Virus record (IMG/VR): IMGVR_UViG_3300020477_000990
Location: 264,150-328,149 of that record
Strand: one strand, 5' to 3'
Length of the DNA stretch: 64,000 nucleotides
The notes beneath the pieces were generated by a model. It had not been told where the DNA came from. It did no database searches and saw nothing but the letters and a program-made list of their open reading frames with translations. This document shows, in pieces, positions 438-61,196 of the stretch (the stretch's first letter is position 1; the number at the start of each line of letters is the position of its first letter). The translations under genes and the position numbers were made by a program.

Positions 438-466
438 TTGACTTTTGATACAAAATATAGTATTAT
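438..466 (+). promoter_or_regulatory. sigma70-type promoter, leaderless start
   Basis: TTGACT-N17-TATTAT; the ATG at 473 lies 6 nt after the -10 box. Confidence 0.7.
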
Positions 467-472
467 TAAGTA

Positions 473-964
473 ATGAGTCTACTTGAAAAAATAAAACAAT
501 TATTTCCAACAGCTTCAAAGCCTAATGATGTAAAAACAATTGGAGATGACCTTCTTCATAATAGTTTTTTACAACTTACGGAATATGTTGAGCTTGTAGT
601 TGCACAAATATATAAATTAACTAAAGATACTACATATAGAAGTCGTGAAGATGGGCTTAAAGGTATAGAATGGCTAAAGAAACAAAAAGAAAAAGATATC
701 AAATACCAGTCAGCATTGGATGAAATTAGAATTCTATATACATGGTGGAATGATTTAAGACCAAAAAGAAATGATCCGTGGAAAGGAATTGATCGATCAT
801 TTGGTGATTTTAGAGACGAATGGCTAAATACAACGGAAGATAAAAATCCAGAGTATAAAAGTTTTATGGATCAATGTCGTCATGCAGAGAAAATTCAAAA
901 AGTATATGGCATTGAGGATACCAAGATGCTAATAAGGTTGGTTAACATTAGAGAATATTTGTAA
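473..964 (+). CDS. hypothetical phage protein
   Basis: 163 aa ORF with own promoter; LYTWW..RP.R.DPW and EDTKMLIRLV motifs recur in phage hypotheticals. Confidence 0.6.
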   Translation: MSLLEKIKQLFPTASKPNDVKTIGDDLLHNSFLQLTEYVELVVAQIYKLTKDTTYRSREDGLKGIEWLKKQKEKDIKYQSALDEIRILYTWWNDLRPKRNDPWKGIDRSFGDFRDEWLNTTEDKNPEYKSFMDQCRHAEKIQKVYGIEDTKMLIRLVNIREYL

Positions 965-965
965 T

Positions 966-1217
966 ATGTCAGATAATAATAAAAAAGATGGTTCTAAAAC
1001 TTTTCATTTAACATATCAAGAAATAGTAGATGCATTTGCACAATATCTTTACGATAGACAGTTGCTTGATAATGAAGAATCTGAAGGTTCTTTAGTATTT
1101 GAGCTCAGTGAAGATAACGGTGCTAAAGTAATTGTTACTCCTAAAGTAACAGAAGATGATGAAAGTTCATCAGATTATACAGTTGAGCATATAGATTTAG
1201 AAAAGGAAGAAGAATAA
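966..1217 (+). CDS. acidic hypothetical protein
   Basis: 83 aa ORF, tightly packed. Confidence 0.55.
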   Translation: MSDNNKKDGSKTFHLTYQEIVDAFAQYLYDRQLLDNEESEGSLVFELSEDNGAKVIVTPKVTEDDESSSDYTVEHIDLEKEEE

Positions 1218-1218
1218 T

Positions 1219-1404
1219 ATGGCATACGATGTAGAATTAGAACAATTAAAAGATGAACACGCGAGATTACACATAGCATTAGAAAAATTAGTAGCAGAAG
1301 GTGATGATGACGTTAGAATCGCTGTTATGAAAAAAAGAAAGCTATGGATTAAAGATAAAATTTCACATATTGAAACTAAAAATCAATTAGCACAAGCAAA
1401 TTAA
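1219..1404 (+). CDS. DUF465/YdcH-like small coiled-coil protein
   Basis: L.QLKDEH..L...MKKRKL.IKD.I pattern. Confidence 0.7.
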   Translation: MAYDVELEQLKDEHARLHIALEKLVAEGDDDVRIAVMKKRKLWIKDKISHIETKNQLAQAN

Positions 1405-1420
1405 TATAATAAAAATAATC

Positions 1421-1831
1421 ATGTACGAATATAGATGTAAAATACTAAGAATAGTGGACGGTGATACAGTAGACGTTGACGTAGATTTAGGATTTGGTAC
1501 ATGGATGCACAAAGAACGTGTTAGATTATTAGGAATAGACACTCCAGAATCAAGAACACGTGATAAAGAAGAAAAGAAATTTGGAATATTATCAAAGAAT
1601 TATTTAAAAACCCACTATCCTGTGGGATCATCAGCAGTATTAAGAACCCATAAAGACAAAACAGGAAAGTTTGGTCGTATATTGGGAGAGTTTATATATG
1701 ATAAAACAACAATTAACCAGAAAATGGTTGACGAAGGCTATGCAGTAGTGTACAATGGACAAAGTAAAGATGATATACAAAAAATGCATTTAAATAACCG
1801 TATACGGCTAATTAACGAAGGTAAACTATAA
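1421..1831 (+). CDS. thermonuclease (SNase-like)
   Basis: [17 protein letters not shown] and GKFGRILG motifs. Confidence 0.9.
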
Positions 1832-1857
1832 ATATAGGAAACTATAGACTTAATACA

Positions 1858-3927
1858 ATGAATACTAAAGACTTAACGCGATACAGAAATATAGGTATTA
1901 TTGCCCACGTTGATGCTGGTAAAACAACTACAACAGAAAGAATATTATACTATACCGGAAAATCCCATAAAATTGGTGAAGTTCACGATGGAGCCGCGAC
2001 AACGGACTACATGGAACAAGAACAAGAACGTGGTATAACAATTACATCAGCGGCAACTACAGTTTTTTGGAACGATCACAGAATTAACATTATTGATACA
2101 CCAGGACACATTGACTTTAACATTGAAGTAAACAGATCATTAAGAGTACTTGATGGTGCTGTAGTAGTATTTGATGGAGTTGCAGGTGTAGAACCACAAT
2201 CAGAAACAAACTGGCGTTTAGCAGATCAATACAGAGTTCCAAGACTTTGTTTTGTAAACAAATTAGATAGAACAGGTGCAGATTTTTTAAGATGTGTTGA
2301 AATGATTAAAGAAAGACTAGGTGCAAAACCAGTTATAATGACAATACCAATTGGTGCAGAATCTAATTTGCAAGGTATTGTAGATTTAGTTACAATGAAA
2401 GCAATAGTTTGGGATGGAGAGCAATTAGGTGCTTCATTTAATGAGCAAGAAATTCCAGAAGATATGAAAGCTGATGCTGAAAAATATAGAACAGAATTAA
2501 TTGATACTGTAGTTGAACAAGATGAAGCTGTAATGGAATCATATTTAGAAGGTGAAGAACCAACAGTAGAACAAATTAAGTCTTGTGTTAGAAAAGGTAC
2601 AGTTGCATTTGATTTTGTTCCTGTATTATGTGGTAGTGCATTTAAAAATAAAGGTGTACAACCTTTACTAGATGCAGTAGTTGATTACTTACCTGCACCA
2701 ACAGAAGTTGATGCAATATATTCTATAGATGAAAATGGTGAACAAAAAGATCCTATTAAATCTGACCCGTCATTACCATTTAGTGCGTTAGCATTTAAAA
2801 TTATTAATGACAAGTATGGTGCATTAACATTTGCTAGAGTATATAGTGGTAAGGCAAGTTCAGGACATACACTTTACAATTCAACAAGAGATGAAAAAGA
2901 ACGTATTGGTAGAATATATGAAATGCACGCCAATTCAAAAGAAGAAGTAAAAAATATACAAGCTGGTGATATTATTGCATTTGTAGGATTAAAAAATGTT
3001 ACTACAGGTGATACTTTAGTTGCAGAAGATAGTGAAGTAGTATTAGAAAGAATGGTGTTTCCAGAACCAGTTATTGATATTGCAGTAGAACCAAAAACAA
3101 AAGATGACCAAGAAAAAATGGGAGAAGCACTTGGTAAGTTTGTACAAGAAGATCCAAGTTTACGAGTTAAAACAGATCAAGAAACAGGTCAAACAATTTT
3201 AAGTGGAATGGGTGAATTGCATTTAGAAATTATTGTTGATAGAATGAAAAGAGAATTTAAAGTTGGCGCCAATATTGGTAAGCCACAAGTTGCTTATAGA
3301 GAAACAATAACAAAACCATATGAAGTAACATATACACATAAAAAACAATCAGGTGGTTCAGGACAATTTGCACATATTGTTTGTAATATTGAACCAGGAC
3401 AACGTGGTGATGGGTATACATTTGAAGATGAAATTAAAGGTGGTAATGTTCCTAAAGAATTTATACCATCAGTTGAAGATGGGTTTAAAACACAAGGCTA
3501 TTCAGGAGTATTAGCAGGATGGCCAACAGTAGATTATAAAGTTACATTGTTAGATGGAAAATATCACGAAGTAGATTCATCAGCAATAGCATTTGAAATT
3601 GCGGCAAAGGCCGCTTTTAGAGAAGGTATGAAACAAGCAGGACCAGTATTATTAGAACCTATGATGAAAGTTGAAGTTATTACACCTGAAGAATATTTAG
3701 GAGATGTAATAGGTGATTTAAGTTCACGTAGAGGACAAATTAGAGGGCAAGAACCAAGAGGTAATGGATTAGTGTTAGATGCATTAGTTCCTTTAGCCCA
3801 AATGTTTGGATATGTTGGTAATTTACGTTCTTTAACAAGCGGTAGAGCGTCATACAGCATGGAATTTAATAGTTATGAAATTGTACCAAGCAATGTACAA
3901 GAAGAAATAGTAGCAGGAAACCAATAA
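1858..3927 (+). CDS. fusA: elongation factor G
   Basis: [23 protein letters not shown]; full-length 689 aa with domains IV/V ([11 protein letters not shown]). Confidence 0.98.
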
Positions 3928-4170: not shown

Positions 4171-4366
4171 AGGTAAAATTAAATGGTTTAATCCGACTAA
4201 AGGTTACGGATTTATTGAAGACAGCGAAGGTGGTAAAGATGTATTTTTACATATTTCTGCACTACACGAAGCTGGAATTGAGTCTATTACAGAAGGCGAA
4301 GAAGTTACTTTTGAAATAGGTGAAAATAGAGGCAAGCCTACCGCTATAAATATTAAAAAGGCATAA
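4163..4366 (+). CDS. csp: cold-shock protein
   Basis: GKIKWFN..KGYGFI..DVFLH; probable GTG start at 4163 after AGGAG. Confidence 0.92.
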
Positions 4367-4376
4367 AGGAGACCAA

Positions 4377-4676
4377 ATGAGTACAGGTAAACTAAAATGG
4401 TATAATGGAGCAAAAGGATTTGGCTTTATAGTACCCTCAGATGGTAGCAAAGATGTTTTTGTTCATGTTACTGCATTTAAAGAAGCAGGCATAACAAAAA
4501 TTGACCAAGGTCAAGCTCTTGAATTTGAGATTAAAGAGCATAACGGGAAACCGGTTGCTACTGCTTTGAAATTATTAGAATCACCTGGTGATGAGTCTGC
4601 AGAAGTTAGTACTGAAGCAAAAGTTGAAGATAAAGCTGAAGAAACACCTGCAGAATCTGAAACACCAGCACAGTAA
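4377..4676 (+). CDS. csp: cold-shock protein with acidic C-terminal tail
   Basis: GKLKWYN..KGFGFI..DVFVH plus an E/A/P-rich tail. Confidence 0.92.
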   Translation: MSTGKLKWYNGAKGFGFIVPSDGSKDVFVHVTAFKEAGITKIDQGQALEFEIKEHNGKPVATALKLLESPGDESAEVSTEAKVEDKAEETPAESETPAQ

Positions 4677-4689
4677 TAAGGAGTAGCAA

Positions 4690-5112
4690 ATGGCTAAAGA
4701 AGTAGTCGGGCTGATTAAATTACAAATTCCAGCCGGACAAGCCAAACCAGCCCCGCCAGTAGGGCCAGCTCTTGGACAGAGAGGTGTGAATATCATGGAC
4801 TTCTGTAAGAAGTTTAATGATAAAACTAAAGCCATGGAAGGTCCAATACCTGTTACTATAACGGTCTATAAAGATAAGAGTTTCATTTTTGAGCTAAAAC
4901 AACCACCAGTATCGTTTTTTATATTAAAAGCGGTTGGTTTAAAAAAAGGTGGCAGAACGCCTGGTCGTTCAGTTATTAAAAGAATAACTAAAGCACAGGT
5001 AAGAGAGATAGCTGAGAAAAAAATGGTTGATATGAATGCCTTCACAGTTGAGCAGGCGATGAAGCAAGTTGAAGGCTCATGTCGTTCGATGAGTATCGAA
5101 GTTGTCAAATAA
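4690..5112 (+). CDS. rplK: 50S ribosomal protein uL11
   Basis: [32 protein letters not shown]; SD AAGGAG. Confidence 0.97.
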
Positions 5113-6650: not shown

Positions 6651-6681
6651 AATTTGTTCATGATTTTATATAAATAATATT

Positions 6682-8064
6682 ATGTTTATGGCAATACTTA
6701 CATTGCTGACTGCATTAAGCATTTCAGCGGTAGCGATTTACTATTCAATTGCAGGTTTGGCGGCTATATTTGCCGCGGCGGCAATCCCTATTATGATTAT
6801 GGGTACTGTTCTTGAGGTTGGTAAGTTAGTAGCGGCCTCTTGGTTGTATCAAAACTGGAAGGCGGCTCCAGGGGCAATTAAAACATATCTATCAATTGCA
6901 GTTGTTGTATTAATGCTAATTACGTCAATGGGTATATTTGGATTTTTATCTAAAGCACACGTAGAGCAAACGTCATTAGGATCTACACAACAAGTTAAAT
7001 TAAACAACATAGAAGAAAAAATTATTAGATCAGAAAATAAAATTGAACGTTGGTCAGATGAAATTGCAAGACTTAATAGTGGGCAAAATGTTCGTGTTGA
7101 TATTTTAATTGATAAGCAAAATGAAGAACTAGCAGTATTGTATGAAAGAATTAAAGAAGAAAAGAACGAATTAAGAGCCCAAGCAGATAAAGATATTGAA
7201 TTACAAAATAATAGATTATTACAAGCAAAAGAACGTAAAGAATCAGATATTGCCGCGGCACAAGAAAGATTTAAAGGTTCTTTTAGTAAAAGAAAATTAG
7301 ATGAAGCTATAGCAGAAGCTAAAGCAAATGAACTTGCAGTTGCTTCGGCGGCACAAAGAATTATTGTAGAAATACAAAATAAGTTACAAGAAAATCTTGC
7401 TAAAATTGATGAAAAATATGCTCCACAAATAGAAAATATTAATGCAACAATTAACGGTTTAAGATCAGAAGCAAACGTTAAGACAGATAATATTGATACA
7501 AGAATTGATGAGTTAGAAATATTCATTGAAGAAGAACAAGATTCGTTAAACCAAGTAAATGAAGATAAAATTATTATTGTAATGGAACAGCAAAAACTTG
7601 AAGTAGAAGTTGGTCCATTAAAATATATTGCAGAATTTATATATGGGCAAGAAGCAGATAGAAATTTATTAGAACAAGCAGTACGTTGGGTTATTATTAC
7701 AATTATATTTGTATTTGATCCACTAGCAGTATGTTTATTAGTAGCGGCTAATATGTCACTTATTAGAAGATTTGGAAGAGGATTTGAAAAACAATATGAG
7801 TACGATCCTAATTTAATAAAAGAATATACTGGTAAGAAGCCAACAAGTGTAACACCAGAGCAAAAAAAAGACGAAAAAGAATTAGCACAGATAAAAGATA
7901 GTAATGCTGAATTAGAAAAAAAATTAAGTGAAGCTGAATCAAAATTAGCTGAACAATTAGATTATCAAAAATCTTTAGAAGATAAACCAGAAAAGTTGGT
8001 CATCAATATTGATGAAACAGCTACAATTGATGCAGAAGATGACACCGAGAAAAAAAAAGGATAA
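6682..8064 (+). CDS. membrane-anchored coiled-coil protein (may extend by -1 frameshift to 8420)
   Basis: Three N-terminal TM helices, long coiled coil, VGPLKYIA...IIFVFDPLAV TM segment; TATAAATA at 6669-6676. Confidence 0.75.
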   Translation: MFMAILTLLTALSISAVAIYYSIAGLAAIFAAAAIPIMIMGTVLEVGKLVAASWLYQNWKAAPGAIKTYLSIAVVVLMLITSMGIFGFLSKAHVEQTSLGSTQQVKLNNIEEKIIRSENKIERWSDEIARLNSGQNVRVDILIDKQNEELAVLYERIKEEKNELRAQADKDIELQNNRLLQAKERKESDIAAAQERFKGSFSKRKLDEAIAEAKANELAVASAAQRIIVEIQNKLQENLAKIDEKYAPQIENINATINGLRSEANVKTDNIDTRIDELEIFIEEEQDSLNQVNEDKIIIVMEQQKLEVEVGPLKYIAEFIYGQEADRNLLEQAVRWVIITIIFVFDPLAVCLLVAANMSLIRRFGRGFEKQYEYDPNLIKEYTGKKPTSVTPEQKKDEKELAQIKDSNAELEKKLSEAESKLAEQLDYQKSLEDKPEKLVINIDETATIDAEDDTEKKKG

Positions 8065-9383: not shown

Positions 9384-10647
9384 GAAAAAAGACGAACAAT
9401 TTAGTTGTTCATTTTGTGGAAAAAATAGAGAGAAAGTAAAAAAACTTATTGCAGGACCAAAGGTTTATATTTGTAATGAGTGTATTGAACTTTGTCATTC
9501 AATTTTAGAAGAAAGTGATTTACGTCAAGTAGAAGAACGTAAGCAAGAATTAAAACAAATTATACCAGATGAATTAAAAGCACATTTAGATGAACACGTA
9601 ATTGGTCAAGAACAAGCTAAAAAAGTTTTAAGTGTAGCAGTATATAACCATTATAAAAGATTAGCTAATCCTATAGTAGATGGTGTTGAACTTGAAAAAT
9701 CAAATGTTTTATTAGTAGGACCAAGTGGCTGTGGTAAAACATTATTAGCAAAACGTATAGCAGATTATTTAGATGTTCCATTTGCTCAAGCAGATGCAAC
9801 TACATTAACTGAAAGTGGATATGTTGGCGATGATGTAGAAAATATTATATTAAGATTATTACAAAATTGTGATTTTGATGTAGCAAAAGCAGAAAAAGGT
9901 ATTGTTTATATTGATGAAATAGATAAAAAATCACGTAAGTCTGAGTCAACTTCTATTACTAGAGATGTATCAGGAGAAGGTGTGCAACAAGCATTATTAA
10001 AATTGCTTGAAGGTACTATAGTGAGAGTTCCACCAGCTGGTGGAAGAAAACACCCACAGCAAGAAATGATTACTGTTGACACTACAAATATTTTATTTGT
10101 TGTAGGTGGAGCATTTGTTGGGTTAGAGGAAATTATTCGTAAAAGACTTAATTTGAATACAACAATAGGATTTAATTCTTCATCACCATCAAAAGAAGAA
10201 ATTGAAAGAGTATTAGAAAGAGCTGAACCAGATGATATAGTTAAATTTGGATTAATTCCTGAAATGGTAGGTAGGTTGCCAGTTGTTGTTGCTTGTCATA
10301 AACTTGATAAACAACATTTAAATGATATTCTTGTTAAACCTAAAAGTGCCATATTAAAGCAATTCCAAAAAATGTTTAAGTTAGATGGAATTGAATTAGA
10401 GTTTAGTGATGAAGCAATTGAAGTTGTATGCACTTTAGCATTAAAAAAAGATATAGGTGCTAGAGGACTAAGATCTGTTTTAGAAAAGCATTTATTACAA
10501 TTACAATACGAGTTACCAATGCTTAAAGAACAAGGTGTTGAACGTATTGCAATTAATGAAACTTTTATAACAGAAGGAAAGCCACCAATGTTAATATATA
10601 AAGAAGTAAATAAAGATAAAGACGGAACGGATAACGGAGCGAAGTGA
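9376..10647 (+). CDS. clpX: ATP-dependent Clp protease ATP-binding subunit ClpX
   Basis: Zn finger [19 protein letters not shown] loop, IGF. Confidence 0.97.
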
Positions 10648-11201
10648 AAAAGCATTTCATTAGAAGAAACAACAAACCAACGGTATTATTAAACTCTGCA
10701 ATTACCTTTCCAGAAATTAGGTTAATTGATCCAGATGGACAATTTATTGGAATAGTTCGAAATCAAGAAGCACATCAAAAAGCCAGAGATGCAGGATTAG
10801 ATTTAATTTGTATTGCCGATAAGGCAAGTCCTCCTGTTTGCCGTATTATGGACTTTGGTAAATGGAATTATGAAAAACAAAAAGCCGATAAGGAAAAGAA
10901 AAAGAAAGAACGAGCTAATCGAATTGAATTGCATGAAGTACAATTAAGACCAGGAACAGATGTTCATGATCTTAAAGTTAAATTAAAAAAAGTACAAGAA
11001 TTTATAGATGATGGAGATAAAGTAAAAATGGTAATGAAGTTACGAGGTAGAGAAATTGGGCAAGGAACTATGTTTGTAGATCAATTAAAAGTTATGGTTG
11101 CTGGCCAATTAGAATTAGGTAAATTTGATTCTCCACCAAAGCAGTTTGGTAATAAAATTATTGCAACAGTTTCTAAACAAAATGAGAAAAAAAATGCTTG
11201 A
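10644..11201 (+). CDS. infC: translation initiation factor IF-3
   Basis: [20 protein letters not shown] and GDKVK motifs. Confidence 0.93.
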
Positions 11202-11231
11202 CAATAATCTAAATTATGTTATTATATTATT

Positions 11232-11564
11232 ATGAAACACAGTTCTAAACCAAGAAAGACATTCGAAATAGGAAAGTTTCAAGGTGATCGTCCTAATTGG
11301 AAAGATCGTAAAGATAGAAAACCAAGATATGAAAAACTTCCTGGAATGGCAGTTGCAGTTCAAGATAATAATGTTGAAAAAGCAATAAGACGACTTAAAA
11401 AAATGTTACAAAAAGAAGGTATGTTTCAAGAATTACGTGATAGACGATATTATGTTAAACCTTCTGAAAAGAAAAGAGTTGCAAAAAAAGCCGCAATAAG
11501 AAGAGCCAAAAGAGATAGAAAATTAGAAGAACTTGGTTTACCCCCAAAAAGATCAAGATACTAG
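11232..11564 (+). CDS. rpsU: 30S ribosomal protein bS21 with N-terminal extension
   Basis: VEKAIRRLKK..QKEG.FQELR.RRYYVKPSEK; TTGACA promoter at 11198. Confidence 0.92.
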   Translation: MKHSSKPRKTFEIGKFQGDRPNWKDRKDRKPRYEKLPGMAVAVQDNNVEKAIRRLKKMLQKEGMFQELRDRRYYVKPSEKKRVAKKAAIRRAKRDRKLEELGLPPKRSRY

Positions 11565-12900: not shown

Positions 12901-13146
12901 ATGAAAAAAAATATTAATAATATAGAAGATTTAGATTTACGAACTTTACAAAAAGAAGCCGCAAGAGCTTTAGCATCACATATTGATGGTACTAATAATG
13001 GATTAGCAGAAATTAATAAAAAATGCCATCATAATTCTACTATATTTTATAAAGAAGTTATTAAACTGTATATTGATAAATTTGGCGATTTACCAAGCAA
13101 AACAGGACCAGGAAAAGAAGTATCATTAGTGTCCGATAAATACTGA
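12901..13146 (+). CDS. hypothetical phage protein
   Basis: ATG at 12901 after TATAAATA; the longer ORF call starts inside tRNA-Asp. Confidence 0.6.
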   Translation: MKKNINNIEDLDLRTLQKEAARALASHIDGTNNGLAEINKKCHHNSTIFYKEVIKLYIDKFGDLPSKTGPGKEVSLVSDKY

Positions 13147-13150
13147 TACT

Positions 13151-14203
13151 ATGCCATTAAGTCTTAATAATATAAAAAAGTTTGATATTGAAATTACAAA
13201 TAAATGTAATGCTAGATGTCCAGGATGTATTCGTACGGTAAATGGAGATACACACCCTTTGCTAAAACAAAATATTACTGAATGGTCAATGGAAGATTTT
13301 TCTAATTTAATTCCTAAAGATATTATTAATGGTAAAGAGTTTATATTTGGTGGCACAGTTGATGATCCTTTTATGAATAAAAATATCATACCAATTACAA
13401 AATATATTTTAGATAATGGTGGATCAATTGAAATACATACTAATACAGGAGCAAATACTGAAAAAACATTTAAAGAAATGGGAAGATTAAGTAAAGAGTC
13501 TGGAAGGCTATTAGTAATATTTTCTGTAGATGGATTTGAAAAAACAAATCATTTATATAGAGTAAATGTTAATTGGAATAAAGTTGTTGAAAATATGAAG
13601 GCATATACAATAGCAGAAGGCAACTGTGAATGGGAATATTTAGTTTTTGATCATAATTATGATGATATAGAGAAAGCAAGACGATTTGCAAATGATTTAG
13701 GAATAAAATTTATATTAAGACAAAATGTAAGAAACAATCATAGTTGGGTTAGTAAAAGCAAAGTAAAAGAAAAAGGTGAAATAGTAACTAAAGAGTTTGA
13801 AGTAAAAACAACCGATAAATTTAAACACCCTGAAACAGAAGAAGTAGTCAAATATAATGATAAATTAAAGGTTTCTAAAGAAGAAGGCCAAAGTATATAT
13901 TGTAAAATGTATCATGATAAAAGTGTATTTGTTGATTGGAACTATAAAGTATGGCCATGTTGTTGGTTTGCAACAGAAAATTTTGAACAGCATGAATATT
14001 TTCATATGTTGATTGATCAATTTGGAGAAACTTGGAATAGTTTAAGGTATCATACTTGGAATGAAATACTAGGCCATGATTATTATTCTAAATTATTATA
14101 TCAAAGTTGGAATGGTCAACAATCAGATTATTATAATCCTACTTGTTTTAAGCAATGTGGTGATAATGCATCTAGACAGAGTTATAAAAAAGAACAATTA
14201 TAG
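13151..14203 (+). CDS. radical SAM protein with C-terminal SPASM/twitch-like domain
   Basis: CNARCPGC, FSVDG, VWPCC, CFKQC. Confidence 0.88.
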   Translation: MPLSLNNIKKFDIEITNKCNARCPGCIRTVNGDTHPLLKQNITEWSMEDFSNLIPKDIINGKEFIFGGTVDDPFMNKNIIPITKYILDNGGSIEIHTNTGANTEKTFKEMGRLSKESGRLLVIFSVDGFEKTNHLYRVNVNWNKVVENMKAYTIAEGNCEWEYLVFDHNYDDIEKARRFANDLGIKFILRQNVRNNHSWVSKSKVKEKGEIVTKEFEVKTTDKFKHPETEEVVKYNDKLKVSKEEGQSIYCKMYHDKSVFVDWNYKVWPCCWFATENFEQHEYFHMLIDQFGETWNSLRYHTWNEILGHDYYSKLLYQSWNGQQSDYYNPTCFKQCGDNASRQSYKKEQL

Positions 14204-14239
14204 ACTTGACAAAAATATAATTGATGCTATTATTATATT

Positions 14240-14485
14240 ATGAACAATTTAGAAATACAAAATAAACAATTAGCTTATGCTTGTATAGATCGTTTAGGTG
14301 GAGAAGCAGAAGGATACGAAGTACGTAAACTTTCTGGAATAGAAGAAGATCCACGAATTAACTATAATGGCCTAAATACACAAATAGCCCTAAGAGGACT
14401 AGAAAAAGAAGGCATTATACATAGAACAAAACGAAATACAAGACAAGTTACTTGGCATATTACAAAGAAAAAAAGAATTATTTAA
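14240..14485 (+). CDS. small winged-helix-like protein
   Basis: ALRGLEKEGII.R wing pattern; promoter TTGACA at 14206. Confidence 0.45.
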   Translation: MNNLEIQNKQLAYACIDRLGGEAEGYEVRKLSGIEEDPRINYNGLNTQIALRGLEKEGIIHRTKRNTRQVTWHITKKKRII

Positions 14486-23673: not shown

Positions 23674-23692
23674 AACAAGTATAATAAACATT

Positions 23693-42759: not shown

Positions 42760-42804
42760 TAAAAAAGTATTGATTTTTTAATTAAACTATTGTATTATAA
42801 ACAT

Positions 42805-43053
42805 ATGGTCGACAGCAAAATAGTAAATTTAGATAAAATCCGGAAAACAAGAAAAAGAAAAAGTCCAAGTAAAACTTCAAAAGCATTTGATCTTGGTGAT
42901 TTATTAAAATGTGATCTCGAGAAAGCTAGAAAAATGCTAGAAAGTGTTTTTCCAGGACACAATATATTAGAAGTTATAGATGATGGTAAGAAGAGATTAT
43001 TAATTAGAGGTCCAAAGTTAAATTGTGTGTTGACAGCGAGGGAAGATTTATGA
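42805..43053 (+). CDS. hypothetical protein (leaderless start)
   Basis: TTGATT-N17-TATTAT at 42770-42798; ATG 6 nt later. Confidence 0.55.
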   Translation: MVDSKIVNLDKIRKTRKRKSPSKTSKAFDLGDLLKCDLEKARKMLESVFPGHNILEVIDDGKKRLLIRGPKLNCVLTAREDL

Positions 43054-49678: not shown

Positions 49679-49723
49679 AAATAATCCTCTTTACAAATAA
49701 TTTATTTGTGCTATAATACAATT

Positions 49724-50302
49724 ATGGATTTAATGATCGATTTAGAAACCCTGTCTACATCAAACAATGCCGCTATTGTAACAATGGCCGCTATTAAGTT
49801 TGATCCACACGCAAACTATAGTGGAATTAAAGTAGAACAATTGCCACCAAATCAAGTTTTTTATAGAAGAATTGATTTAGATTCTTGTATAAAAATTGGT
49901 TTAGTTACTAACGAGCAAACTATTCAATGGTGGGGAACACAACCAAAAGAAGCACAAGACGAAGCATTTGGTGAAGGTAATAGAATTAGTATAGAAGAAG
50001 CCATGCGTGAATTAAACAAGTTTACATTTGGAATGAAAAAGCCTTGGAGTCATGGATCATGTTTTGATTTAATGATTATTGAAGAAGTTTGTAAACGGTT
50101 AGAGCTAGGAGTACGTTGGAAGTTTTATGACATACGTGATACTAGAACATTATTTGACCTAGGAATTGATCCTAAAATGCCAAAAGCAGATAAGCACCAT
50201 GCGTTGCACGATGCATTTAGACAAGTAGTTGGCGTACAAAATGTTATGCGTGAATTAGTCAAAAATGGTGTACCAGTTAAAAATACAGTAAAATTATTTT
50301 AA
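49724..50302 (+). CDS. 3'-5' exonuclease (DEDDh family)
   Basis: MIDLETL, WSHG..FD, RDTRT, HHALHDA; promoter TTTACA-N16-TATAAT. Confidence 0.85.
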   Translation: MDLMIDLETLSTSNNAAIVTMAAIKFDPHANYSGIKVEQLPPNQVFYRRIDLDSCIKIGLVTNEQTIQWWGTQPKEAQDEAFGEGNRISIEEAMRELNKFTFGMKKPWSHGSCFDLMIIEEVCKRLELGVRWKFYDIRDTRTLFDLGIDPKMPKADKHHALHDAFRQVVGVQNVMRELVKNGVPVKNTVKLF

Positions 50303-50334
50303 ATTTAGTTGCTGTTTGTCATATAAATATTATT

Positions 50335-50904
50335 ATGGATTGGCAACAAATACTTAAAAATAAAAAGCAGACATTCAATTGGTCTGATAAAGTTCCAGAA
50401 CGAAAAATAATTGATCAAATATTAGATGAAGTACATACATATTGTCCAAGTAAGCAAAATAATGTTCCGTACTCAATTGAAGTATTAGATTGGTCTAATC
50501 CAGCAGAACGAAATGAGATATTTAAAAATACATGGTGTGATTCAAATACACCTGAAGATAGACGGAATCCACAAGTATTGGCACCTTATTTGTTTATTTG
50601 GCGTTCTAGAGATGTAGGAAATTCTACAGATAACAGCTATTCGCAACTAGAAATTGGGTTAGCATCAATGTTTGTAGTAGCATCAGCAGTAAATTATGGA
50701 CTCGATATAGGATTTTGTGGATGTCATAATCAAGATGATATTATATTATCTGTAGGTGTTGGATATGCTGGAGTTAAAGATGGTGGAAAGTTTTGGAATC
50801 CAATATCACAAAAAGAAGAGTGGTCTCCTGGAATAGTGCCTGGAAATGATACAAATGATGGGCAAGTAAAGCCAAATAAAAGCGATTATATTAAATTTCA
50901 TTAG
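50335..50904 (+). CDS. nitroreductase-like protein
   Basis: PSKQN..PY, AP, GLDIGFCGC pattern. Confidence 0.6.
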   Translation: MDWQQILKNKKQTFNWSDKVPERKIIDQILDEVHTYCPSKQNNVPYSIEVLDWSNPAERNEIFKNTWCDSNTPEDRRNPQVLAPYLFIWRSRDVGNSTDNSYSQLEIGLASMFVVASAVNYGLDIGFCGCHNQDDIILSVGVGYAGVKDGGKFWNPISQKEEWSPGIVPGNDTNDGQVKPNKSDYIKFH

Positions 50905-54400: not shown

Positions 54401-54557
54401 ATTTCAGTCAATGCTATTAATGAAGGCATCAGGTGGCGGAATTAGTACAATACACTTTAGTGAATTAGATAAAGGAATTGATAATTTTAAAGTTAATGGT
54501 CCGTATGTACGTGGACAAAAGCAACGTGGAATGGATGTTCAAGCAACATTAAGGTAA
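51495..54557 (+). CDS. multidomain polyprotein: cytidyltransferase-like + HAD 5'-nucleotidase-like + PD-(D/E)xK-like
   Basis: GRFNPPTKGH (HxGH-type), VYVDMDGVLANF...LIDD (HAD), GPGE...D...EIEVK; N-terminal MKLNEL tag. Confidence 0.7.
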   Translation: MKLNELIQPKGTKASFTFGRFNPPTKGHSHLLNVVKKAAGTGDHYVFTGRTNDKDRNPLRYEDKITLMRAMFPTINIVDDPNVKNPWQALEELGKHYDDVTLVVGSDRQQDFQSQMRPYMKEFGIKNFQVISSGERDADSTDVQGISATKARAFARVGDFKSFSQTVDGGETLKKELYNKVRQGMGVTESKKPVPPKKPNPVAKQLTDPKFRPQTVKDKKKEIDKGYVKHKGKAYDINEAYIMDLNQNQDLLVLRVKDTDKKGHIEVRGKKNYETDGYDPKDPLHRVLDQLDGATVSRLYSDEKVVLNPKNPRTAPTIKKAQELMKEQEPSKPIVYVDMDGVLANFFEEYAKLAGVKSGNYKDIPPAKTDPTLNKMVGTDFFNRLPKFPTADKLLQLVTSMFGSYSILSAPLRGDHQNSTAQKHKWIQRELAIKPDNVIIVGRKDSYATQADGTPNILIDDRGRNVEAWRNRGGLGVKYQADEDPLSKVEQALTQFKGQFTLKEWGGLIVKGINTTADVGMDAIKKQSGKLGFKVDKQGKPPIMNTKGQAVVKRMQEQLIKINGSNKDLTLQQQIDLLEITKGIKNIVKERKAKRVKKASSNASEVPYQNDAGTMSLLTHPGTELWQKMKATSKPGTEEWFKTWRTLSYLTKGRKNHYMLPIKEELEKLLVKYKIIKESDVVDLQQAIAKRVSSVTDPALLNKIASMLRRSNIGNISRMAFKQDEDAAKFINRLSEIIVGIEVPINDKIAFLRKFGRSNFIKPEVLFDNSGAVHSMDDWWEGTGFATTMFKLMINDPQLQGKSAGESGPGEVAIACFHKKISVGSDPSAGYDLKWGNQEIEVKTKASEKSSSGGGRWTAYDGAPLETYLQSGQSLLDPEKVPAGVRATKSSRAGTQISFAEVLNNPQYLKDPNTPLTQQQQKEIFAKVLKQAYQSAPNEIINTALANYPNVTDKDIAQAAFASYRVKQGFQSMLLMKASGGGISTIHFSELDKGIDNFKVNGPYVRGQKQRGMDVQATLR

Positions 54558-54565
54558 ATATTATT

Positions 54566-54862
54566 ATGCGTATATTAGAAATTATAAGTGAAAATGACAG
54601 ACGTGATTTTATGAAACGTTTGGGTAAAACAGCGGCGGCTACAGCTGGTGCTTTAGCTTTAGGATCATTTGCACTTCCATCAAAAGCATGGCCTAGTGAA
54701 TTACCTGATAATTTTAACTTTATGGATGAGTTTTTAAGTGATAAAGTTTTAAATGATCCAAAATATAAAGAATTTAAATTAAATGGTGAAAAGCTTCTTG
54801 ATATGTTAAAGAATATAGAAAAAAATAAGTTAAAAAAACAGGATAAAGGCATAGACGTTTAA
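54566..54862 (+). CDS. putative internal head protein with internal Tat signal
   Basis: MRILEIISE followed by RRDFMK, a hydrophobic stretch and SKA. Confidence 0.6.
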   Translation: MRILEIISENDRRDFMKRLGKTAAATAGALALGSFALPSKAWPSELPDNFNFMDEFLSDKVLNDPKYKEFKLNGEKLLDMLKNIEKNKLKKQDKGIDV

Positions 54863-59307: not shown

Positions 59308-59337
59308 TTCTAAAATATAAACATAAATAAAAGTACA

Positions 59338-59580
59338 ATGGCAAAGTTAAGAATTTTCCCTCAAGAAGTAATGGAAGTCGTAGATGTTTCACAAATGGAA
59401 CTACCTATTATTGCCGCTAAAATGTTTAGAATGAAATTACGTCCTACATTAGTAGATTGTTTAATTGCATTAAAAAATAAAGAAGTAGACCCAGCAACAA
59501 TTATAGAAGCAATTAAAGAAGATGCTCGTCCTAAAAAAATTGAAAAAGATTTAGATCAATCACAAGATCAAGTAGAATAA
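59338..59580 (+). CDS. hypothetical protein
   Basis: 80 aa ORF after TAAATA at 59324. Confidence 0.55.
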   Translation: MAKLRIFPQEVMEVVDVSQMELPIIAAKMFRMKLRPTLVDCLIALKNKEVDPATIIEAIKEDARPKKIEKDLDQSQDQVE

Positions 59581-59602
59581 TTCAAATAATCCACATTATA
59601 TA

Positions 59603-59631
59603 TTGACAAAATACAACTTTTACGTTATACT
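59603..59631 (+). promoter_or_regulatory. sigma70-type promoter of porin
   Basis: TTGACA-N17-TATACT. Confidence 0.75.
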
Positions 59632-59701
59632 AACTTTGAATATACAATAGTATATTCGAGTTCTTCCCTTTGGAGGAAATTTATAAAGAGGAGAAAAGAA
59701 G

Positions 59702-60634
59702 ATGAGAATATTTCCAAGCAAGGCTTTAATAGGCTTTTTAGCAGTAATATTTGCGTTTGTATTAGTCAGTTGTAGTGAAGCTGAAGCTGTAGAGACAAAA
59801 ATCTACGGTACGTTTAACTACAAATTGAGTAATGACGAGAATAGTTCTGGTACAAGTCATTTAAAGGCTGAAAACAACTCATCGTTGGTAGGCATTGACG
59901 CCGCTGAAGATATTGGCGAAGGCATAACTGGCTTTGCTAAATTAGAAGTAGGTGTTGATACTGATGATGGCAATAACAATCCTTTTGATTCACGTTTAGC
60001 TTATGTAGGCTTAAACTTTGGTCAACTAGGATCGATATCTGCAGGACGTCAGTCATCTCCATTTACTGATAATGTAAGTGGAATAACAAATGTATTTGAA
60101 GTTTATGGTTCAGGTGCAGATCAAAATTTGTTCACACGTGATGCAAATACGATCGCATACTCGAATCAAATGGCGGGAATTACATTTGATGGTCTAGCAA
60201 AGATAGACGGTTCTACAGGTAAGAATGGGATAGATGTTTCAGAAGCAACAGCTACCTATTCTACATTTGGAGTAACTGTAAGTGGTGGTGTATCAAATGA
60301 TCATGTAAATGATATTGATTACTACGGCGCTGGAGTATCTTATGATGCTTCGTCAATGGGTGTACCTGTAAGTGTAGGTTATACTTACACATATAAGGAT
60401 GCCGCAACTGATGTTACAGGCAATGAAATCATTGGATCTTATTCTGTTAGTAATGATTTAAAAGTTACTGGTGGATACGGTAAAATCGAAGATTCAACTG
60501 CATTTTATACAGCAGGAGCATCATATGGAATAACTGGTTCATTATCAACGTATGTTGAATATGAGCATCAAAACAAAACTGGATCAAATAACGATACAGA
60601 CAGTTATTCTACCGGTCTTAAATTTACATTCTAA
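59702..60634 (+). CDS. Gram-negative porin
   Basis: Signal peptide, IYG, S..G..E..G...AKLE, RLAYVGL..G.I.AGR, C-terminal GLKFTF beta-signal. Confidence 0.88.
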   Translation: MRIFPSKALIGFLAVIFAFVLVSCSEAEAVETKIYGTFNYKLSNDENSSGTSHLKAENNSSLVGIDAAEDIGEGITGFAKLEVGVDTDDGNNNPFDSRLAYVGLNFGQLGSISAGRQSSPFTDNVSGITNVFEVYGSGADQNLFTRDANTIAYSNQMAGITFDGLAKIDGSTGKNGIDVSEATATYSTFGVTVSGGVSNDHVNDIDYYGAGVSYDASSMGVPVSVGYTYTYKDAATDVTGNEIIGSYSVSNDLKVTGGYGKIEDSTAFYTAGASYGITGSLSTYVEYEHQNKTGSNNDTDSYSTGLKFTF

Positions 60635-60664
60635 TTTAAGGCTCTTTCAAGAACGTCTTGATCA

Positions 60665-60725
60665 AAGGGGAGGTTGGTATTTTACCAGCTTTCCTCTTGA
60701 CAAATTGCATATCGGTAAATATAAT
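60665..60725 (+). terminator. hairpin after porin abutting a sigma70 promoter for rpiB
   Basis: AAGGGGAGGTTGGTA/TACCAGCTTTCCTCTT hairpin; TTGACA(60697)-N17-TATAAT. Confidence 0.7.
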
Positions 60726-60731
60726 ATACAT

Positions 60732-61196
60732 ATGAAAACTATTGATCTTATTCTAGGTTCTGATCATAGAGGCCTAGAATTAAAACATGAATTGCTAGAT
60801 TGGATATCACCGGACGATATCGAAAACGAAACAAAGTTTGATGTGGCGGTAATACAAAATTTAAAACCACATGATAATAAAAAACCTGTTGACTATCCAG
60901 ATGTATTAAAAGAGTTTGGACATTATTTTGATATATACAATCATGGTATATTAATATGTGGATCTGGATTTGGTATGTGTATTGGTGCAAATAGATTTAA
61001 AAATGTTAGAGCAGTAGTTTGTAGAGATGTATTTGATGTTGAACAGGCTAGACAACATAACAATATGAATGTATTATGTATGGGTGCAGATTATACAGAT
61101 TTTGATACAGCAAAATATATGGTTGAAGCTTTCTTTACAGAAAAGTTTGAAGGTGGTAGACATTTGCGTAGAGTTAAAAAGTTAGGTAAGTTATGA
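60732..61196 (+). CDS. rpiB: ribose-5-phosphate isomerase B
   Basis: GSDHRG, DYPD, ICGSGFG, ARQHNN.N, FEGGRH..RV. Confidence 0.95.
   Translation: MKTIDLILGSDHRGLELKHELLDWISPDDIENETKFDVAVIQNLKPHDNKKPVDYPDVLKEFGHYFDIYNHGILICGSGFGMCIGANRFKNVRAVVCRDVFDVEQARQHNNMNVLCMGADYTDFDTAKYMVEAFFTEKFEGGRHLRRVKKLGKL

What the first reader, a model, noticed from the sequence alone, without database searches (positions are those of the whole stretch)
438..60734. Pervasive leaderless-mRNA architecture alongside phage-encoded IF3 and bS21
Seen: sigma70 -10 boxes end 6 nt before the ATG at 473, 11232, 14240, 42805, 49724 and 60732 (7 nt at 23693), with no SD. Late-type TAAATA cores end 5 nt before the ATG at 6682, 25519, 50335, 54566 and 39435(-), and 6-8 nt before it at 26638, 13151 and 59338. 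This places the transcription start at or within a few nt of the AUG. Established: IF3 levels govern leaderless initiation and bS21 modulates SD usage. Inference: the phage may retune host ribosomes (IF3, bS21, uL11, bL33, EF-G) toward its leaderless or short-leader transcripts; rpsU itself looks leaderless.
Basis: partly seen in the sequence, partly recalled or inferred. Interest (0 to 1): 0.78.

Follow-up and report, generated by a model that had tools for sequence, protein, structure and literature searches.

The report
Promoters fused directly to start codons
In this 328-kb marine giant phage and its uncultivated relatives, many promoters sit so close to the ATG that the first gene of each transcript should be made from an mRNA with no leader; this is real and unusual for T4-like phages, but nothing shows that the phage's own IF3 or bS21 serve it.

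Summary
The window is the last 64 kb of a circular 328,149-bp marine phage genome (31.8% GC) that is distantly T4-like.

Two promoter classes abut start codons far more often than chance:
- Full sigma-70 promoters whose -10 box ends 6 nt before the ATG.
- A T4-late-type TAAATA box that ends 5 or 8 nt before the ATG. The phage encodes a gp55-like late sigma factor.

About 70 of roughly 417 genes (17%) look like this, which is nearly half of the recognisable promoters. Internal cistrons use Shine-Dalgarno sites or overlap their neighbour, so "pervasive" overstates it.

The layout is conserved, with diverged spacer sequence, in front of terL and uvsW in dozens of uncultivated relatives and genome-wide in two long relative contigs. 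It is absent from PA5oct, T4 and Vibrio phage 2.275.O, whose late boxes lie 22-30 nt upstream.

These starts are almost always ATG. Protein N-termini are conserved from that ATG. Two metatranscriptome contig ends fall exactly on predicted 5' ends.

IF3, IF1, bS21, uL11, bL33 and EF-G are present and look canonical. Published work says IF3 and bS21 disfavour leaderless translation, so the "retuning" idea is unsupported.

The parts
438..475 (+). Early sigma-70-type promoter fused to its ATG. -35 TTGACT 438-443, 17-nt spacer, -10 TATTAT 461-466, 6 nt, ATG 473. The ORF is 473-964 (163 aa, no family match).
11198..11564 (+). Early promoter plus rpsU (bS21). -35 TTGACA 11198-11203 overlaps the IF3 stop codon. 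TG-extended -10 TATTAT 11220-11225, 6 nt, ATG 11232. The 110-aa bS21 has a roughly 38-aa basic N-terminal extension.
14206..14242 (+). Early promoter. TTGACA 14206-14211, 16-nt spacer, TG-extended TATTAT 14228-14233, 6 nt, ATG 14240 (81-aa ORF).
23657..23695 (+). Early promoter. TTGATC 23657-23662, 17-nt spacer, TATAAT 23680-23685, 7 nt, ATG 23693 (239-aa ORF).
42770..42807 (+). Early promoter. TTGATT 42770-42775, 17-nt spacer, TATTAT 42793-42798, 6 nt, ATG 42805 (82-aa ORF).
49690..49726 (+). Early promoter. TTTACA 49690-49695, 16-nt spacer, TATAAT 49712-49717, 6 nt, ATG 49724. The product is a 3'-5' exoribonuclease-like protein whose Pfam domain starts at residue 2.
60697..60734 (+). Early promoter. 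TTGACA 60697-60702, 17-nt spacer, TATAAT 60720-60725, 6 nt, ATG 60732. The product is RpiB-like, with the Pfam domain starting at residue 7.
6671..6684 (+). Late box TAAATA 6671-6676, 5 nt, ATG 6682 (460-aa ORF).
13137..13153 (+). Late box TAAATA 13137-13142, 8 nt, ATG 13151 (350-aa ORF). T then A at positions 5 and 6 after the box predict a 3-nt leader.
25508..25521 (+). Late box TAAATA 25508-25513, 5 nt, ATG 25519 (radical SAM protein, 369 aa).
26626..26640 (+). Late box TAAATA 26626-26631, 6 nt, ATG 26638 (radical SAM-like protein, 489 aa).
39433..39446 (-). Late box TAAATA 39446-39441 on the minus strand, 5 nt, ATG 39435 (radical SAM protein, 331 aa). The site is at a divergent gene junction.
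50324..50337 (+). Late box TAAATA 50324-50329, 5 nt, ATG 50335 (189-aa ORF).
54555..54568 (+). Late box TAAATA 54555-54560, 5 nt, ATG 54566 (98-aa ORF).
59324..59340 (+). Late box TAAATA 59324-59329, 8 nt, ATG 59338 (80-aa ORF). It lies 16 nt after the end of tRNA-Thr (59232-59307).
4347..5112 (+). Contrast case: a leadered late promoter. TAAATA 4347-4352 lies 24 nt before ATG 4377, with an AAGGAG SD in between. The unit runs into the SD-led uL11 gene (4690-5112).
10607..11201 (+). Contrast case: IF3 (infC-like, 185 aa, GTG start at 10644) with a GGAG SD at 10636-10639. A TAAATA box at 10607-10612 lies 31 nt upstream, so the mRNA is leadered.
1829..3927 (+). EF-G gene (1858-3927). A TAAATA box at 1829-1834 lies 23 nt upstream, so it is not leaderless. 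Its nearest cellular homologues are marine alphaproteobacterial EF-Gs.
63052..63267 (+). bL33 gene. The Pfam L33 match covers 63091-63246.

Best explanation
The phage uses two promoter classes. Early promoters are of the host sigma-70 type: TTGACA, 16-17 nt, TAT(A/T)AT. Late promoters are of the T4 type: a TAAATA box with no -35 element, read by a phage gp55-like sigma factor.

In nearly half of the recognisable promoters of each class, the box is placed so that the normal initiation point is the A of the ATG. That point is the 7th nt after the -10 hexamer, or the 6th nt after TAAATA, and is marked by a conserved T then purine. In a smaller late set, initiation would fall 3-4 nt upstream of the ATG.

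The first cistron of each such transcript would therefore be translated from a leaderless or near-leaderless mRNA through its 5'-terminal AUG. Downstream cistrons of the same operon use SD sites or start/stop overlap.

This layout is an inherited, selected trait of a clade of uncultivated marine and freshwater giant phages related to PA5oct, Rak2 and Atu_ph07. Their cultured relatives do not have it.

Status of each step:
- Shown: the motif geometry, its enrichment, its conservation, the exclusive use of ATG and the conserved protein N-termini.
- Partly shown: the RNA 5' ends, at two sites.
- Inferred: that translation is really leaderless, and why this layout is used.

Possible reasons for the layout are genome compaction, since the intergenic gap is exactly one promoter long, or SD-independent and S1-independent expression of first cistrons.
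For: Geometry and enrichment in this genome:
- document the spacing and its excess over background.
- In both the N5 and N8 late classes, the 5th nt after TAAATA is T (23 of 25 and 10 of 12) and the 6th is a purine. The conserved unit is therefore box plus initiation site, not box plus ATG.

The boxes behave as promoters:
- A gp55-like sigma factor is present: T4 gp55 E 8.7e-5, phrog_12791 E 2.9e-81.
- Late boxes precede terL, virion proteins and the operon holding the gp23-type capsid gene.
- The same box lies 12-32 nt upstream of other genes here, most of them SD-led, and 22-30 nt upstream of gene starts in PA5oct, T4 and a Vibrio phage.

Conservation in relatives:
- About 67 of 76 terL relatives (55-93% identity) have TAA(A/G)TA 4-6 nt before the terL ATG. 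It often follows a hairpin plus T-run terminator directly, and the spacer sequence varies.
- In those loci, TAAATA-N5-ATG opens an ORF in 47 of 48 and 96 of 101 distinct cases.
- Many uvsW relatives keep TTGACA or TTGCAT, about 17 nt, TATAAT, 5-7 nt, ATG. In those loci, a full promoter plus N6 plus ATG opens an ORF in 46 of 51 cases, against 0-6 at nearly all other spacings; the neighbouring N5 gives 14 and N3 gives 10.
- The pattern is repeated genome-wide in relatives G001 and G002.

The ATG is the true start:
- The DnaJ J-domain begins at residue 3, the RpiB domain at residue 7 and the exoribonuclease domain at residue 2.
- The terL N-terminus (K-S-L-D-G-V-L) is kept through synonymous codon changes.
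- The bS21 extension is conserved where no internal Met exists.

Other support:
- In this genome, gene-start-like hits at these spacings are 44 ATG against 1 GTG and 0 TTG. In relatives they are about 230 ATG against 5 or fewer GTG/TTG. SD-preceded starts are 16% GTG or TTG.
- Early-type leaderless genes have a median upstream gap of 37 nt, the length of one promoter. 30% of late-type ones lie at divergent junctions.
- RNA: contig X25#19 starts exactly at the A of the ATG at genome 125969. Contig X20#13 ends at 123519, the 6th nt after the TAAATA box of the minus-strand gene. Coverage of gene 123727 begins 16 nt after its ATG. No contig covers the intergenic DNA upstream of these three starts.
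Against: - No direct 5'-end mapping exists. The RNA evidence is a handful of short assembled metatranscriptome contigs, which have no strand information, show presence but not absence, and come from a region outside the window.
- The raw TAAATA-N5-ATG count is only about 1.8 sd above the Markov expectation.
- Many leaderless-type genes lie in same-strand arrays. Read-through transcripts would also carry them internally without an SD.
- A T4 gp45 clamp homologue was not found by sequence, and gp33 was not looked for.
- The 5' coding regions of leaderless-type genes are no less structured than those of SD-led genes (p = 0.21).
- Contigs from the candidate host lineage show no clear spike of a -10 box next to the ATG.
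Confidence: 0.75

Rival explanations
1. One reading: the phage-encoded IF3, bS21, uL11, bL33 and EF-G reprogram host ribosomes so that they prefer the phage's leaderless or short-leader mRNAs.
For: - These genes lie in the same genome as the leaderless layout.
- The IF3-bS21 tandem is also present in marine relative G001.
- bS21 carries an unusual, conserved basic N-terminal extension of about 38 aa and is itself expressed from a promoter fused to its ATG.
Against: - IF3 is canonical in domains and key residues.
- IF1 is encoded and IF2 is not.
- Published work points the other way. IF3 antagonises leaderless initiation, and phiYS40 lowers IF3 and raises IF2 (PMC3594737; Tedin 1999 as listed in the references of PMC12340547). 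Ribosomes lacking uS2 and bS21 translate the lambda cI leaderless mRNA better (PMC10491246).
- Relative G002 has late leaderless sites but no IF3 or bS21 in its 232 kb, although that record is only 65% complete.
- Most phage genes are SD-led.
Confidence: 0.1
2. The boxes are real promoters, but the adjacent ATG is not the start codon. Translation would begin at a downstream in-frame start, so the apparent 5' coding sequence is really a leader.
For: - The Pfam S21 domain starts at residue 41 of the 110-aa ORF, and a Met lies at residue 39.
- Several leaderless-type ORFs are small proteins with no family match, whose starts cannot be checked.
Against: - G001 bS21 keeps the extension with Leu in place of the internal Met.
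- Domains start at residues 2-7 in the DnaJ, RpiB and exoribonuclease proteins.
- The terL N-terminal residues are conserved through synonymous changes immediately after the ATG.
- The fixed promoter-to-ATG distance and the near-exclusive use of ATG would be unexplained.
Confidence: 0.05
3. TAAATA-N5-ATG is a translation signal (an A/U-rich enhancer or Kozak-like context) inside long polycistronic mRNAs, not a transcription start.
For: - Many late-type sites lie in same-strand gene arrays with short gaps.
- SD use seems weak in the candidate host lineage.
Against: - The identical box occurs 12-32 nt upstream of other genes, most of them SD-led, in this phage, and 22-30 nt upstream of gene starts in cultured relatives.
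- It matches the T4 late consensus, and a gp55 homologue is present.
- In relatives it follows a terminator hairpin directly.
- In the N8 class, the T-purine pair stays fixed relative to the box, not to the ATG.
- Contig ends fall at the predicted starts.
- It cannot explain the early sites, which have a full -35 and -10.
Confidence: 0.07
4. The pattern is a chance product of AT-rich sequence.
For: Low-stringency promoter-like matches are at background level, and the raw TAAATA-N5-ATG count is only modestly above simulation.
Against: - Sharp single-offset peaks occur at gene starts.
- Full promoter plus N6 plus ATG is seen 12 times against 0.75 expected.
- The pattern is conserved across hundreds of kb of diverged relatives.
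- It is absent from equally AT-rich PA5oct and T4.
Confidence: 0.01

Closest known systems
Thermus phage phiYS40 (Sevostyanova et al. 2007, as summarised in PMC3594737)
   Same: A large lytic phage in which most middle and late transcripts are leaderless, so a whole temporal class of phage genes bypasses SD-dependent initiation.
   Different: - The phiYS40 host phylum (Deinococcus-Thermus) commonly has -10 boxes next to ORFs (PMC12340547).
- phiYS40 is reported to raise host IF2 and lower IF3, whereas this phage encodes IF3 and IF1.
- Here the layout affects sigma-70-type early promoters and gp55-type late promoters.
- Here only first cistrons are affected.
T4-type late transcription (gp55 sigma, TATAAATA box), including PA5oct, Rak2-like phages, Atu_ph07 and Vibrio phage 2.275.O
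   Same: - A gp55-like sigma factor is encoded.
- The box has a TAAATA core and no -35 element.
- It stands before structural and packaging genes.
- The terL, gp23-type capsid and uvsW genes are homologous to those of these phages.
   Different: In T4, PA5oct and the Vibrio phage, the box lies 22-30 nt before the ATG and an SD lies between them. Here and in the uncultivated clade, a large share of boxes end 4-8 nt before the ATG. The two bases upstream of TAAATA are not TA here.
Lambda cI mRNA from PRM and other single leaderless phage mRNAs
   Same: A sigma-70 promoter placed so that +1 is the A of the AUG; translation through the 5'-terminal AUG.
   Different: Those are isolated regulatory genes. 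Here there are about 70 genes per genome across two promoter classes.
-10 box adjacent to ORFs in Deinococcus-Thermus (PMC12340547) and leaderless genes of Actinobacteria
   Same: The same promoter-to-ATG geometry, used as a common mode of expression.
   Different: - That is a cellular, phylum-wide trait with a weak or absent -35 element.
- Here it is a viral trait with a strong -35 element or a phage sigma factor.
- The candidate host lineage (low-GC marine Alphaproteobacteria) shows no such spike in the contigs examined.
Phage-encoded bS21 (pelagiphage HTVC008M, PMC6375957; freshwater phages, PMC9723584)
   Same: An aquatic phage carries a bS21 gene that Pfam recognises clearly.
   Different: - Here bS21 has a basic N-terminal extension of about 38 aa.
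- It lies directly after a phage IF3 gene.
- It is driven by an early-type promoter fused to its ATG. In PMC9723584, bS21 sits among late structural genes.

Membership tests
Leaderless mRNA | The transcript's 5' end is the A of the AUG, or at most a few nt upstream. | tested here: inconclusive
   Promoter geometry predicts it. Two metatranscriptome contig ends coincide with predicted 5' ends, and none of the three covered units has a contig over the intergenic DNA upstream of its start. Contigs are not 5'-end mapping.
Leaderless mRNA | No Shine-Dalgarno sequence and no room for one. | tested here: met
   Only 4-8 nt lie between the box and the ATG. None of the 27 early-type sites and 2 of the 44 late-type sites have a strict SD motif nearby.
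Leaderless mRNA | Dependence on a 5'-terminal AUG rather than GUG or UUG. | tested here: met
   At these spacings, 44 gene-start-like ATG against 1 GTG and 0 TTG in this genome. Relatives give about 230 ATG against 5 or fewer GTG/TTG. SD-preceded starts are 16% GTG or TTG.
Leaderless mRNA | Shown to be translated from the 5' end. | not testable with these tools
   This needs toeprinting, reporter assays or N-terminal proteomics.
T4-type late promoter (gp55-dependent) | The phage encodes a gp55-family sigma factor. | tested here: met
   Genome 192150-192956. T4 gp55 match E 8.7e-5; phrog_12791 E 2.9e-81 and phrog_234 E 7.7e-23.
T4-type late promoter (gp55-dependent) | A TATAAATA-like box around -10 with no conserved -35 element. 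| tested here: met
   The TAAATA core is invariant by selection, and nothing is conserved further upstream. The two bases 5' of the core are not TA, so this is a shortened variant.
T4-type late promoter (gp55-dependent) | Located in front of late (structural or packaging) genes. | tested here: met
   It precedes terL, virion structural proteins and the head-gene operon that contains the gp23-type capsid gene.
T4-type late promoter (gp55-dependent) | gp33 co-activator and gp45 sliding-clamp activator. | tested here: inconclusive
   T4 gp45 found no match in the genome, but sequence divergence could hide it. gp33 was not searched.
Sigma-70-type (housekeeping) promoter | -35 TTGACA-like and -10 TATAAT-like hexamers 16-18 nt apart. 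| tested here: met
   Seven sites in the window score 9-11 of 12 matches, and two of them have a TG-extended -10 box. Genome-wide there are 12 against 0.75 expected at the 6-nt spacing.
phiYS40-like strategy (leaderless mRNAs plus a shifted IF2/IF3 balance) | Infection raises IF2 and lowers IF3. | tested here: not met
   Host factor levels cannot be measured here. The phage itself encodes IF3 and IF1 and no IF2, which is the opposite direction.
Canonical IF3 | IF3_N and IF3_C domains with the 30S-binding and fidelity residues. | tested here: met
   Both Pfam domains are present. In the alignment to E. coli IF3 (8jsg_A, E 4.4e-34), the Y75, R99, R131, R133 and E134 equivalents are conserved. 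R112 and R129 are Lys, and R116 is Glu.
Ribosomal protein bS21 | Ribosomal_S21 domain. | tested here: met
   PF01165 E 4.2e-18 over residues 41-92 and phrog_21469. The added N-terminal extension is conserved in G001.

The most novel reading that the evidence does not exclude
The IF3-bS21 module, conserved in at least one marine relative, together with the phage IF1 could build a phage-specific initiation regime. The roughly 38-residue basic N-terminal extension of bS21 lies next to the 16S 3' tail and the mRNA exit channel. It might let ribosomes accept 5'-terminal AUG mRNAs even when IF3 is high, while the extra IF3 and IF1 penalise host messages. That would be a virus-made specialised ribosome matched to a clade-wide leaderless gene layout.
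Probability: 0.1. Interest if true: 0.85.

Novelty: new variant of a known kind. Interest (0 to 1): 0.62.

Why it matters
- Leaderless mRNAs in phages are known as single cases (lambda cI) or in phiYS40, whose host phylum uses them routinely.
- Here both host-sigma early promoters and phage-sigma (T4-type) late promoters are systematically fused to start codons. This holds across a whole clade of abundant, transcriptionally active marine and freshwater giant phages. Their cultured relatives keep ordinary leaders.
- This gives a natural comparison for asking why a virus drops 5' leaders. Candidate reasons are genome compaction, independence from SD and S1, escape from host or phage mRNA-targeting controls, or timing.
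- It is a practical warning for gene callers and start-site annotation in metagenomic phages.
- It makes the function of phage-encoded IF3, IF1 and bS21 testable against two mRNA types from the same genome.

Tried and rejected
- Nucleotide search of the phage collection found only a tRNA match.
- A T4 gp45 search in this genome found nothing.
- bS21 relatives in IMG/VR are distant and mostly SD-led, so they say nothing about the early promoter.
- Raw motif counts do not separate this genome from cultured phages. This genome gives 30 against 20 for the reversed-pattern control, and PA5oct gives 15 against 12. I therefore switched to a criterion that the ATG must look like a gene start.
- The ESM Atlas look-up of EF-G gave no host clue.
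- The EF-G search in genomes points to low-GC marine Alphaproteobacteria, including Pelagibacteraceae single-cell genomes, at 64-67% identity, but the margin over other Alphaproteobacteria is small.
- I tested whether that lineage has a -10 box next to its ATGs. About 380 kb of contigs show no clear spike, only weak SD use.
- The 5' coding regions of leaderless-type genes are no less structured than those of SD-led genes (p = 0.21). A at position +4 is only mildly more frequent, 54% against 40%.
- Metatranscriptome contigs gave fragmentary coverage of the region I chose. Run X27 gave nothing, and three leaderless-type genes there had no coverage.
- My recollection that Pelagibacter lacks bS21 was wrong (PMC6375957).
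- Sevostyanova 2007 could not be read directly.
- Rfam and tRNA scans of an expressed, apparently non-coding stretch found nothing.

Full report
WHAT THE SEQUENCE IS

The window is bases 264150-328149 of a single 328,149-bp contig. The contig has a 75-bp terminal overlap and 31.8% GC, and most genes lie on one strand. The genome collection lists it as a complete IMG/VR virus record with direct terminal repeats.

DNA runs that hold it are marine metagenomes from several studies. Marine metatranscriptomes hold 52-61% of the sampled words in its capsid-gene region. The phage is therefore widespread and is transcribed in nature.

It is distantly T4-like:
- It has a gp23-type major capsid protein and a UvsW-like helicase.
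- Its large terminase is 56% identical to that of Pseudomonas phage PA5oct, with weaker matches to Sinorhizobium phage Phosso, Vibrio phage 2.275.O, Atu_ph07 and the Rak2-like coliphages.

The nearest cellular homologues of its EF-G are marine alphaproteobacterial single-cell genomes, including Pelagibacteraceae, at 64-67% identity. Together with the GC content, this suggests a low-GC marine alphaproteobacterial host. This is a hint, not a result.

CHECKING THE OBSERVATION

- Seven sites have a full promoter: TTGACA-like, 16-17 nt, TAT(A/T)AT. The -10 box ends 6 nt before the ATG, or 7 nt at 23693.
- Eight sites have a TAAATA box that ends 5, 6 or 8 nt before the ATG.

I called 417 ORFs with a simple hexamer model and measured motif positions relative to the first ATG of each.
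- TAT[AT]AT peaks at offset 6: 16 against about 2 elsewhere.
- TAAATA peaks at offset 5 (18) and offset 8 (12), against about 1.8 elsewhere.

Without any gene calls, 25 of 30 TAAATA-N5-ATG and 12 of 20 TAAATA-N8-ATG occurrences open an ORF of at least 50 aa. Other spacings give 0-5. A full promoter followed by 6 nt and ATG occurs 12 times, against 0.75 +/- 1 in third-order Markov simulations.

Two cautions apply:
- The raw TAAATA-N5-ATG count is only modestly above simulation (30 against 20.6 +/- 5.1).
- Loose promoter-like matches are at background level in this AT-rich DNA.

The signal is the single-nucleotide-sharp coincidence with gene starts, not motif abundance.

HOW MUCH OF THE GENOME IS INVOLVED

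A rule-based classification gives:
- 27 early-type and 44 late-type promoter-adjacent starts.
- 162 strict and 59 weak SD-led starts.
- 125 starts with neither feature.

The last class has a median upstream gap of -4 nt, so it mostly consists of genes that overlap the upstream gene. Early-type leaderless genes have a median gap of 37 nt, the length of one promoter. Thirty per cent of late-type ones sit at divergent junctions.

Both promoter classes also exist in a leadered form. About 20-25 strong sigma-70 promoters lie 17-40 nt before an SD-led start. TAAATA boxes form a second hump 18-25 nt before starts.

The picture is tightly packed operons. The first cistron is either leaderless or has a short SD leader, and internal cistrons use an SD or overlap. 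The word "pervasive" fits promoters (nearly half) but not genes (about 17%).

WHY THE BOXES ARE PROMOTERS

- The phage encodes a gp55-family late sigma factor.
- Late boxes precede terL, virion structural proteins, the head-gene operon and candidate lysis genes.
- In both the N5 and N8 classes, the 5th base after TAAATA is T and the 6th is a purine. The conserved unit is box plus initiation dinucleotide, with the ATG at +1 or +4.
- The cultured relatives PA5oct, Vibrio phage 2.275.O, Atu_ph07 and PBECO4 carry the same (G/A)nTAAATA box before neighbouring late genes. In three of the four an SD lies between box and ATG, with leaders of roughly 20-30 nt; the Vibrio phage example has a gap of about 14 nt and no evident SD.
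- PA5oct promoters of the TTGAC and TATAATA type were reported around RNA-seq transcription starts (PMC7318152).

CONSERVATION IN RELATIVES

Eighty IMG/VR loci with terL relatives (55-93% identity) were fetched.
- About 67 of 76 usable loci have TAA(A/G)TA 4-6 nt before the terL ATG.
- The box often follows a GC-rich hairpin and T-run directly, and the spacer sequence varies.
- Seven loci have an SD instead. In two of these (L047, L049) the TAAATA box lies about 28 nt upstream of the ATG, followed by an AAGGAA SD. This is a natural control showing that box and SD alternate.
- Across these loci, TAAATA-N5-ATG opens an ORF in 47 of 48 and 96 of 101 distinct cases.

For uvsW, many relatives of 62-94% identity keep a -35 box, about 17 nt, a -10 box, 5-7 nt and the ATG, with diverged sequence. 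A full promoter plus N6 plus ATG opens an ORF in 46 of 51 distinct cases, against 0-6 at nearly all other spacings; the neighbouring N5 gives 14 and N3 gives 10.

Two long relative contigs repeat the genome-wide pattern.

Applying the same statistic to complete PA5oct and T4 and to 320 kb of Vibrio phage 2.275.O shows no peak at these spacings. Their boxes sit 22-30 nt upstream. The layout is therefore a derived trait of an uncultivated aquatic clade.

IS THE ADJACENT ATG THE START CODON?

- Pfam domains begin at residues 2-7 in the exoribonuclease, RpiB and DnaJ proteins.
- The terL N-terminus is conserved through synonymous codon changes immediately after the ATG.
- The bS21 ORF has a 38-aa basic extension before the S21 domain and an internal Met. 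In relative G001 the homologous extension is present with Leu at that position, and the gene again follows IF3 and a promoter that ends 8 nt from the ATG.
- Starts at these spacings are ATG almost without exception, while SD-preceded starts are 16% GTG or TTG. G would also be a good initiating nucleotide for transcription. The absence of GTG therefore points to a translational need for a 5'-terminal AUG, as is known for leaderless mRNAs in E. coli. That last point rests on my own knowledge; Brock et al. 2008 is cited for it in PMC5312081.

RNA EVIDENCE

One read-laying run was available. I laid contigs from four metatranscriptome runs on genome 120600-126500, a late-gene region with divergent junctions. 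Coverage was fragmentary. Three transcription units with a silent upstream region were covered.
- For the gene at 125969 (TAAATA-N6-ATG), the outermost contig starts exactly at the A of the ATG.
- For the minus-strand operon starting at 123515 (TAAATA-N9-ATG), the outermost contig ends at 123519, the 6th nt after the box.
- For the gene at 123727 (TAAGTA-N5-ATG), coverage begins 16 nt after the ATG.
- No contig covers the intergenic DNA upstream of any of these three starts.

This agrees with the model but is not 5'-end mapping.

THE TRANSLATION GENES

All are confirmed: EF-G, uL11, IF3, bS21 and bL33 in the window, plus IF1 elsewhere in the genome. IF2 was not found.
- IF3 has both domains and keeps the key E. 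coli residues. It uses a GTG start with a GGAG SD.
- uL11 and probably IF3 lie behind leadered late promoters. EF-G has a late box 23 nt upstream. Only bS21 is leaderless-type.
- Published work indicates that IF3 antagonises leaderless initiation, and phiYS40 lowers IF3 and raises IF2 (PMC3594737). Ribosomes lacking uS2 and bS21 favour the lambda cI leaderless mRNA (PMC10491246). bS21 supports SD to anti-SD pairing (PMC9723584).

A canonical IF3, IF1 and bS21 set is therefore more simply read as support for SD-led 30S initiation, which most phage cistrons use, or for general translational capacity. The phage's SD signal is clearly stronger than in contigs of the candidate host lineage. The bS21 extension is the one feature that hints at this.

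COMPARISON WITH WHAT IS KNOWN, AND VERDICT

- In the papers I searched, phiKZ was reported to have no leaderless transcripts and AR9 only 5' UTRs of 26-491 nt (PMC8244752, PMC5312081).
- Searches for leaderless together with jumbo phage, cyanophage or pelagiphage returned only method citations.
- The nearest precedents are phiYS40 and the -10-box-next-to-ORF mode of Deinococcus-Thermus (PMC12340547).

This is a new variant of a known kind: leaderless first cistrons driven by both host-type and T4-type promoters, as a clade trait.

Confidence that these are promoter-fused, leaderless or near-leaderless starts is about 0.75. Confidence that the phage IF3 and bS21 exist to serve them is about 0.1.

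Noticed in passing
window 63926-64000 and genome 1-75: The contig's 75-bp terminal overlap lies inside a tRNA-Ala gene. The window also carries tRNA-Ile, Val, Asp, Glu, Asn and Thr.
   Followed up: partly
window 11198-11203: The -35 hexamer TTGACA of the rpsU promoter contains the TGA stop codon of IF3. The whole promoter fits in the 30 nt between the two genes.
   Followed up: yes
window 25519-26628, 26638-28107, 38440-39435(-); genome 224363, 250903, 146195(-): At least six radical SAM paralogues are present, each behind a start-codon-adjacent late box. Their function is unknown.
   Followed up: partly
window 15104-16996; genome 27739-28629: The phage encodes a DnaK (phrog_22485, 927 bits) and a DnaJ. 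The DnaJ gene has an early promoter fused to its ATG.
   Followed up: partly
genome 24872-25081 (outside the window): An IF1 gene (PF01176, E 3.4e-23) with an SD-led start. No IF2 gene was detected.
   Followed up: yes
genome 192150-192956 (L017:994-1800): The gp55-like late sigma factor is 268 aa, against 185 aa in T4; only T4 residues 51-116 align. It is driven by a leadered sigma-70-type promoter and lies divergent from a late virion-protein operon.
   Followed up: partly
genome 121395-121968 (L008:1395-1968): Contigs from two metatranscriptome runs both start at 121395, in a stretch where I called no gene (121225-121795). There is no Rfam or tRNA match. It may be an unannotated small gene or a non-coding RNA.
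   Followed up: partly
genome 126353-128322: A stretch of about 2 kb with no ORF passing my coding-score filter; nothing is known about it.
   Followed up: no
window 59308-59340; genome 99007: Late boxes lie only a few nt after the 3' end of a tRNA gene, so tRNA and late mRNA units are packed end to end.
   Followed up: no
window 51495-54557: A 1020-aa ORF combines a cytidyltransferase-like N-terminal part with a 5'-3' deoxyribonucleotidase-like domain.
   Followed up: no
L020-L099 (terL relatives): In most freshwater and marine relatives, a GC-rich hairpin with a T-run ends 1-4 nt before the late box of terL. Terminator, promoter and start codon together occupy about 45 nt.
   Followed up: partly
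G006, G008, G010 contigs (L315-L334): Marine alphaproteobacterial single-cell genomes that carry the closest EF-G (29-30.5% GC) show a much weaker SD signal before ORF starts than the phage does.
   Followed up: partly
run X8: A small DNA run of 5 million letters, labelled with a coded organism name rather than 'metagenome', holds 60% of the sampled words of window 9000-15000. It may be a single-cell genome of an infected host.
   Followed up: no
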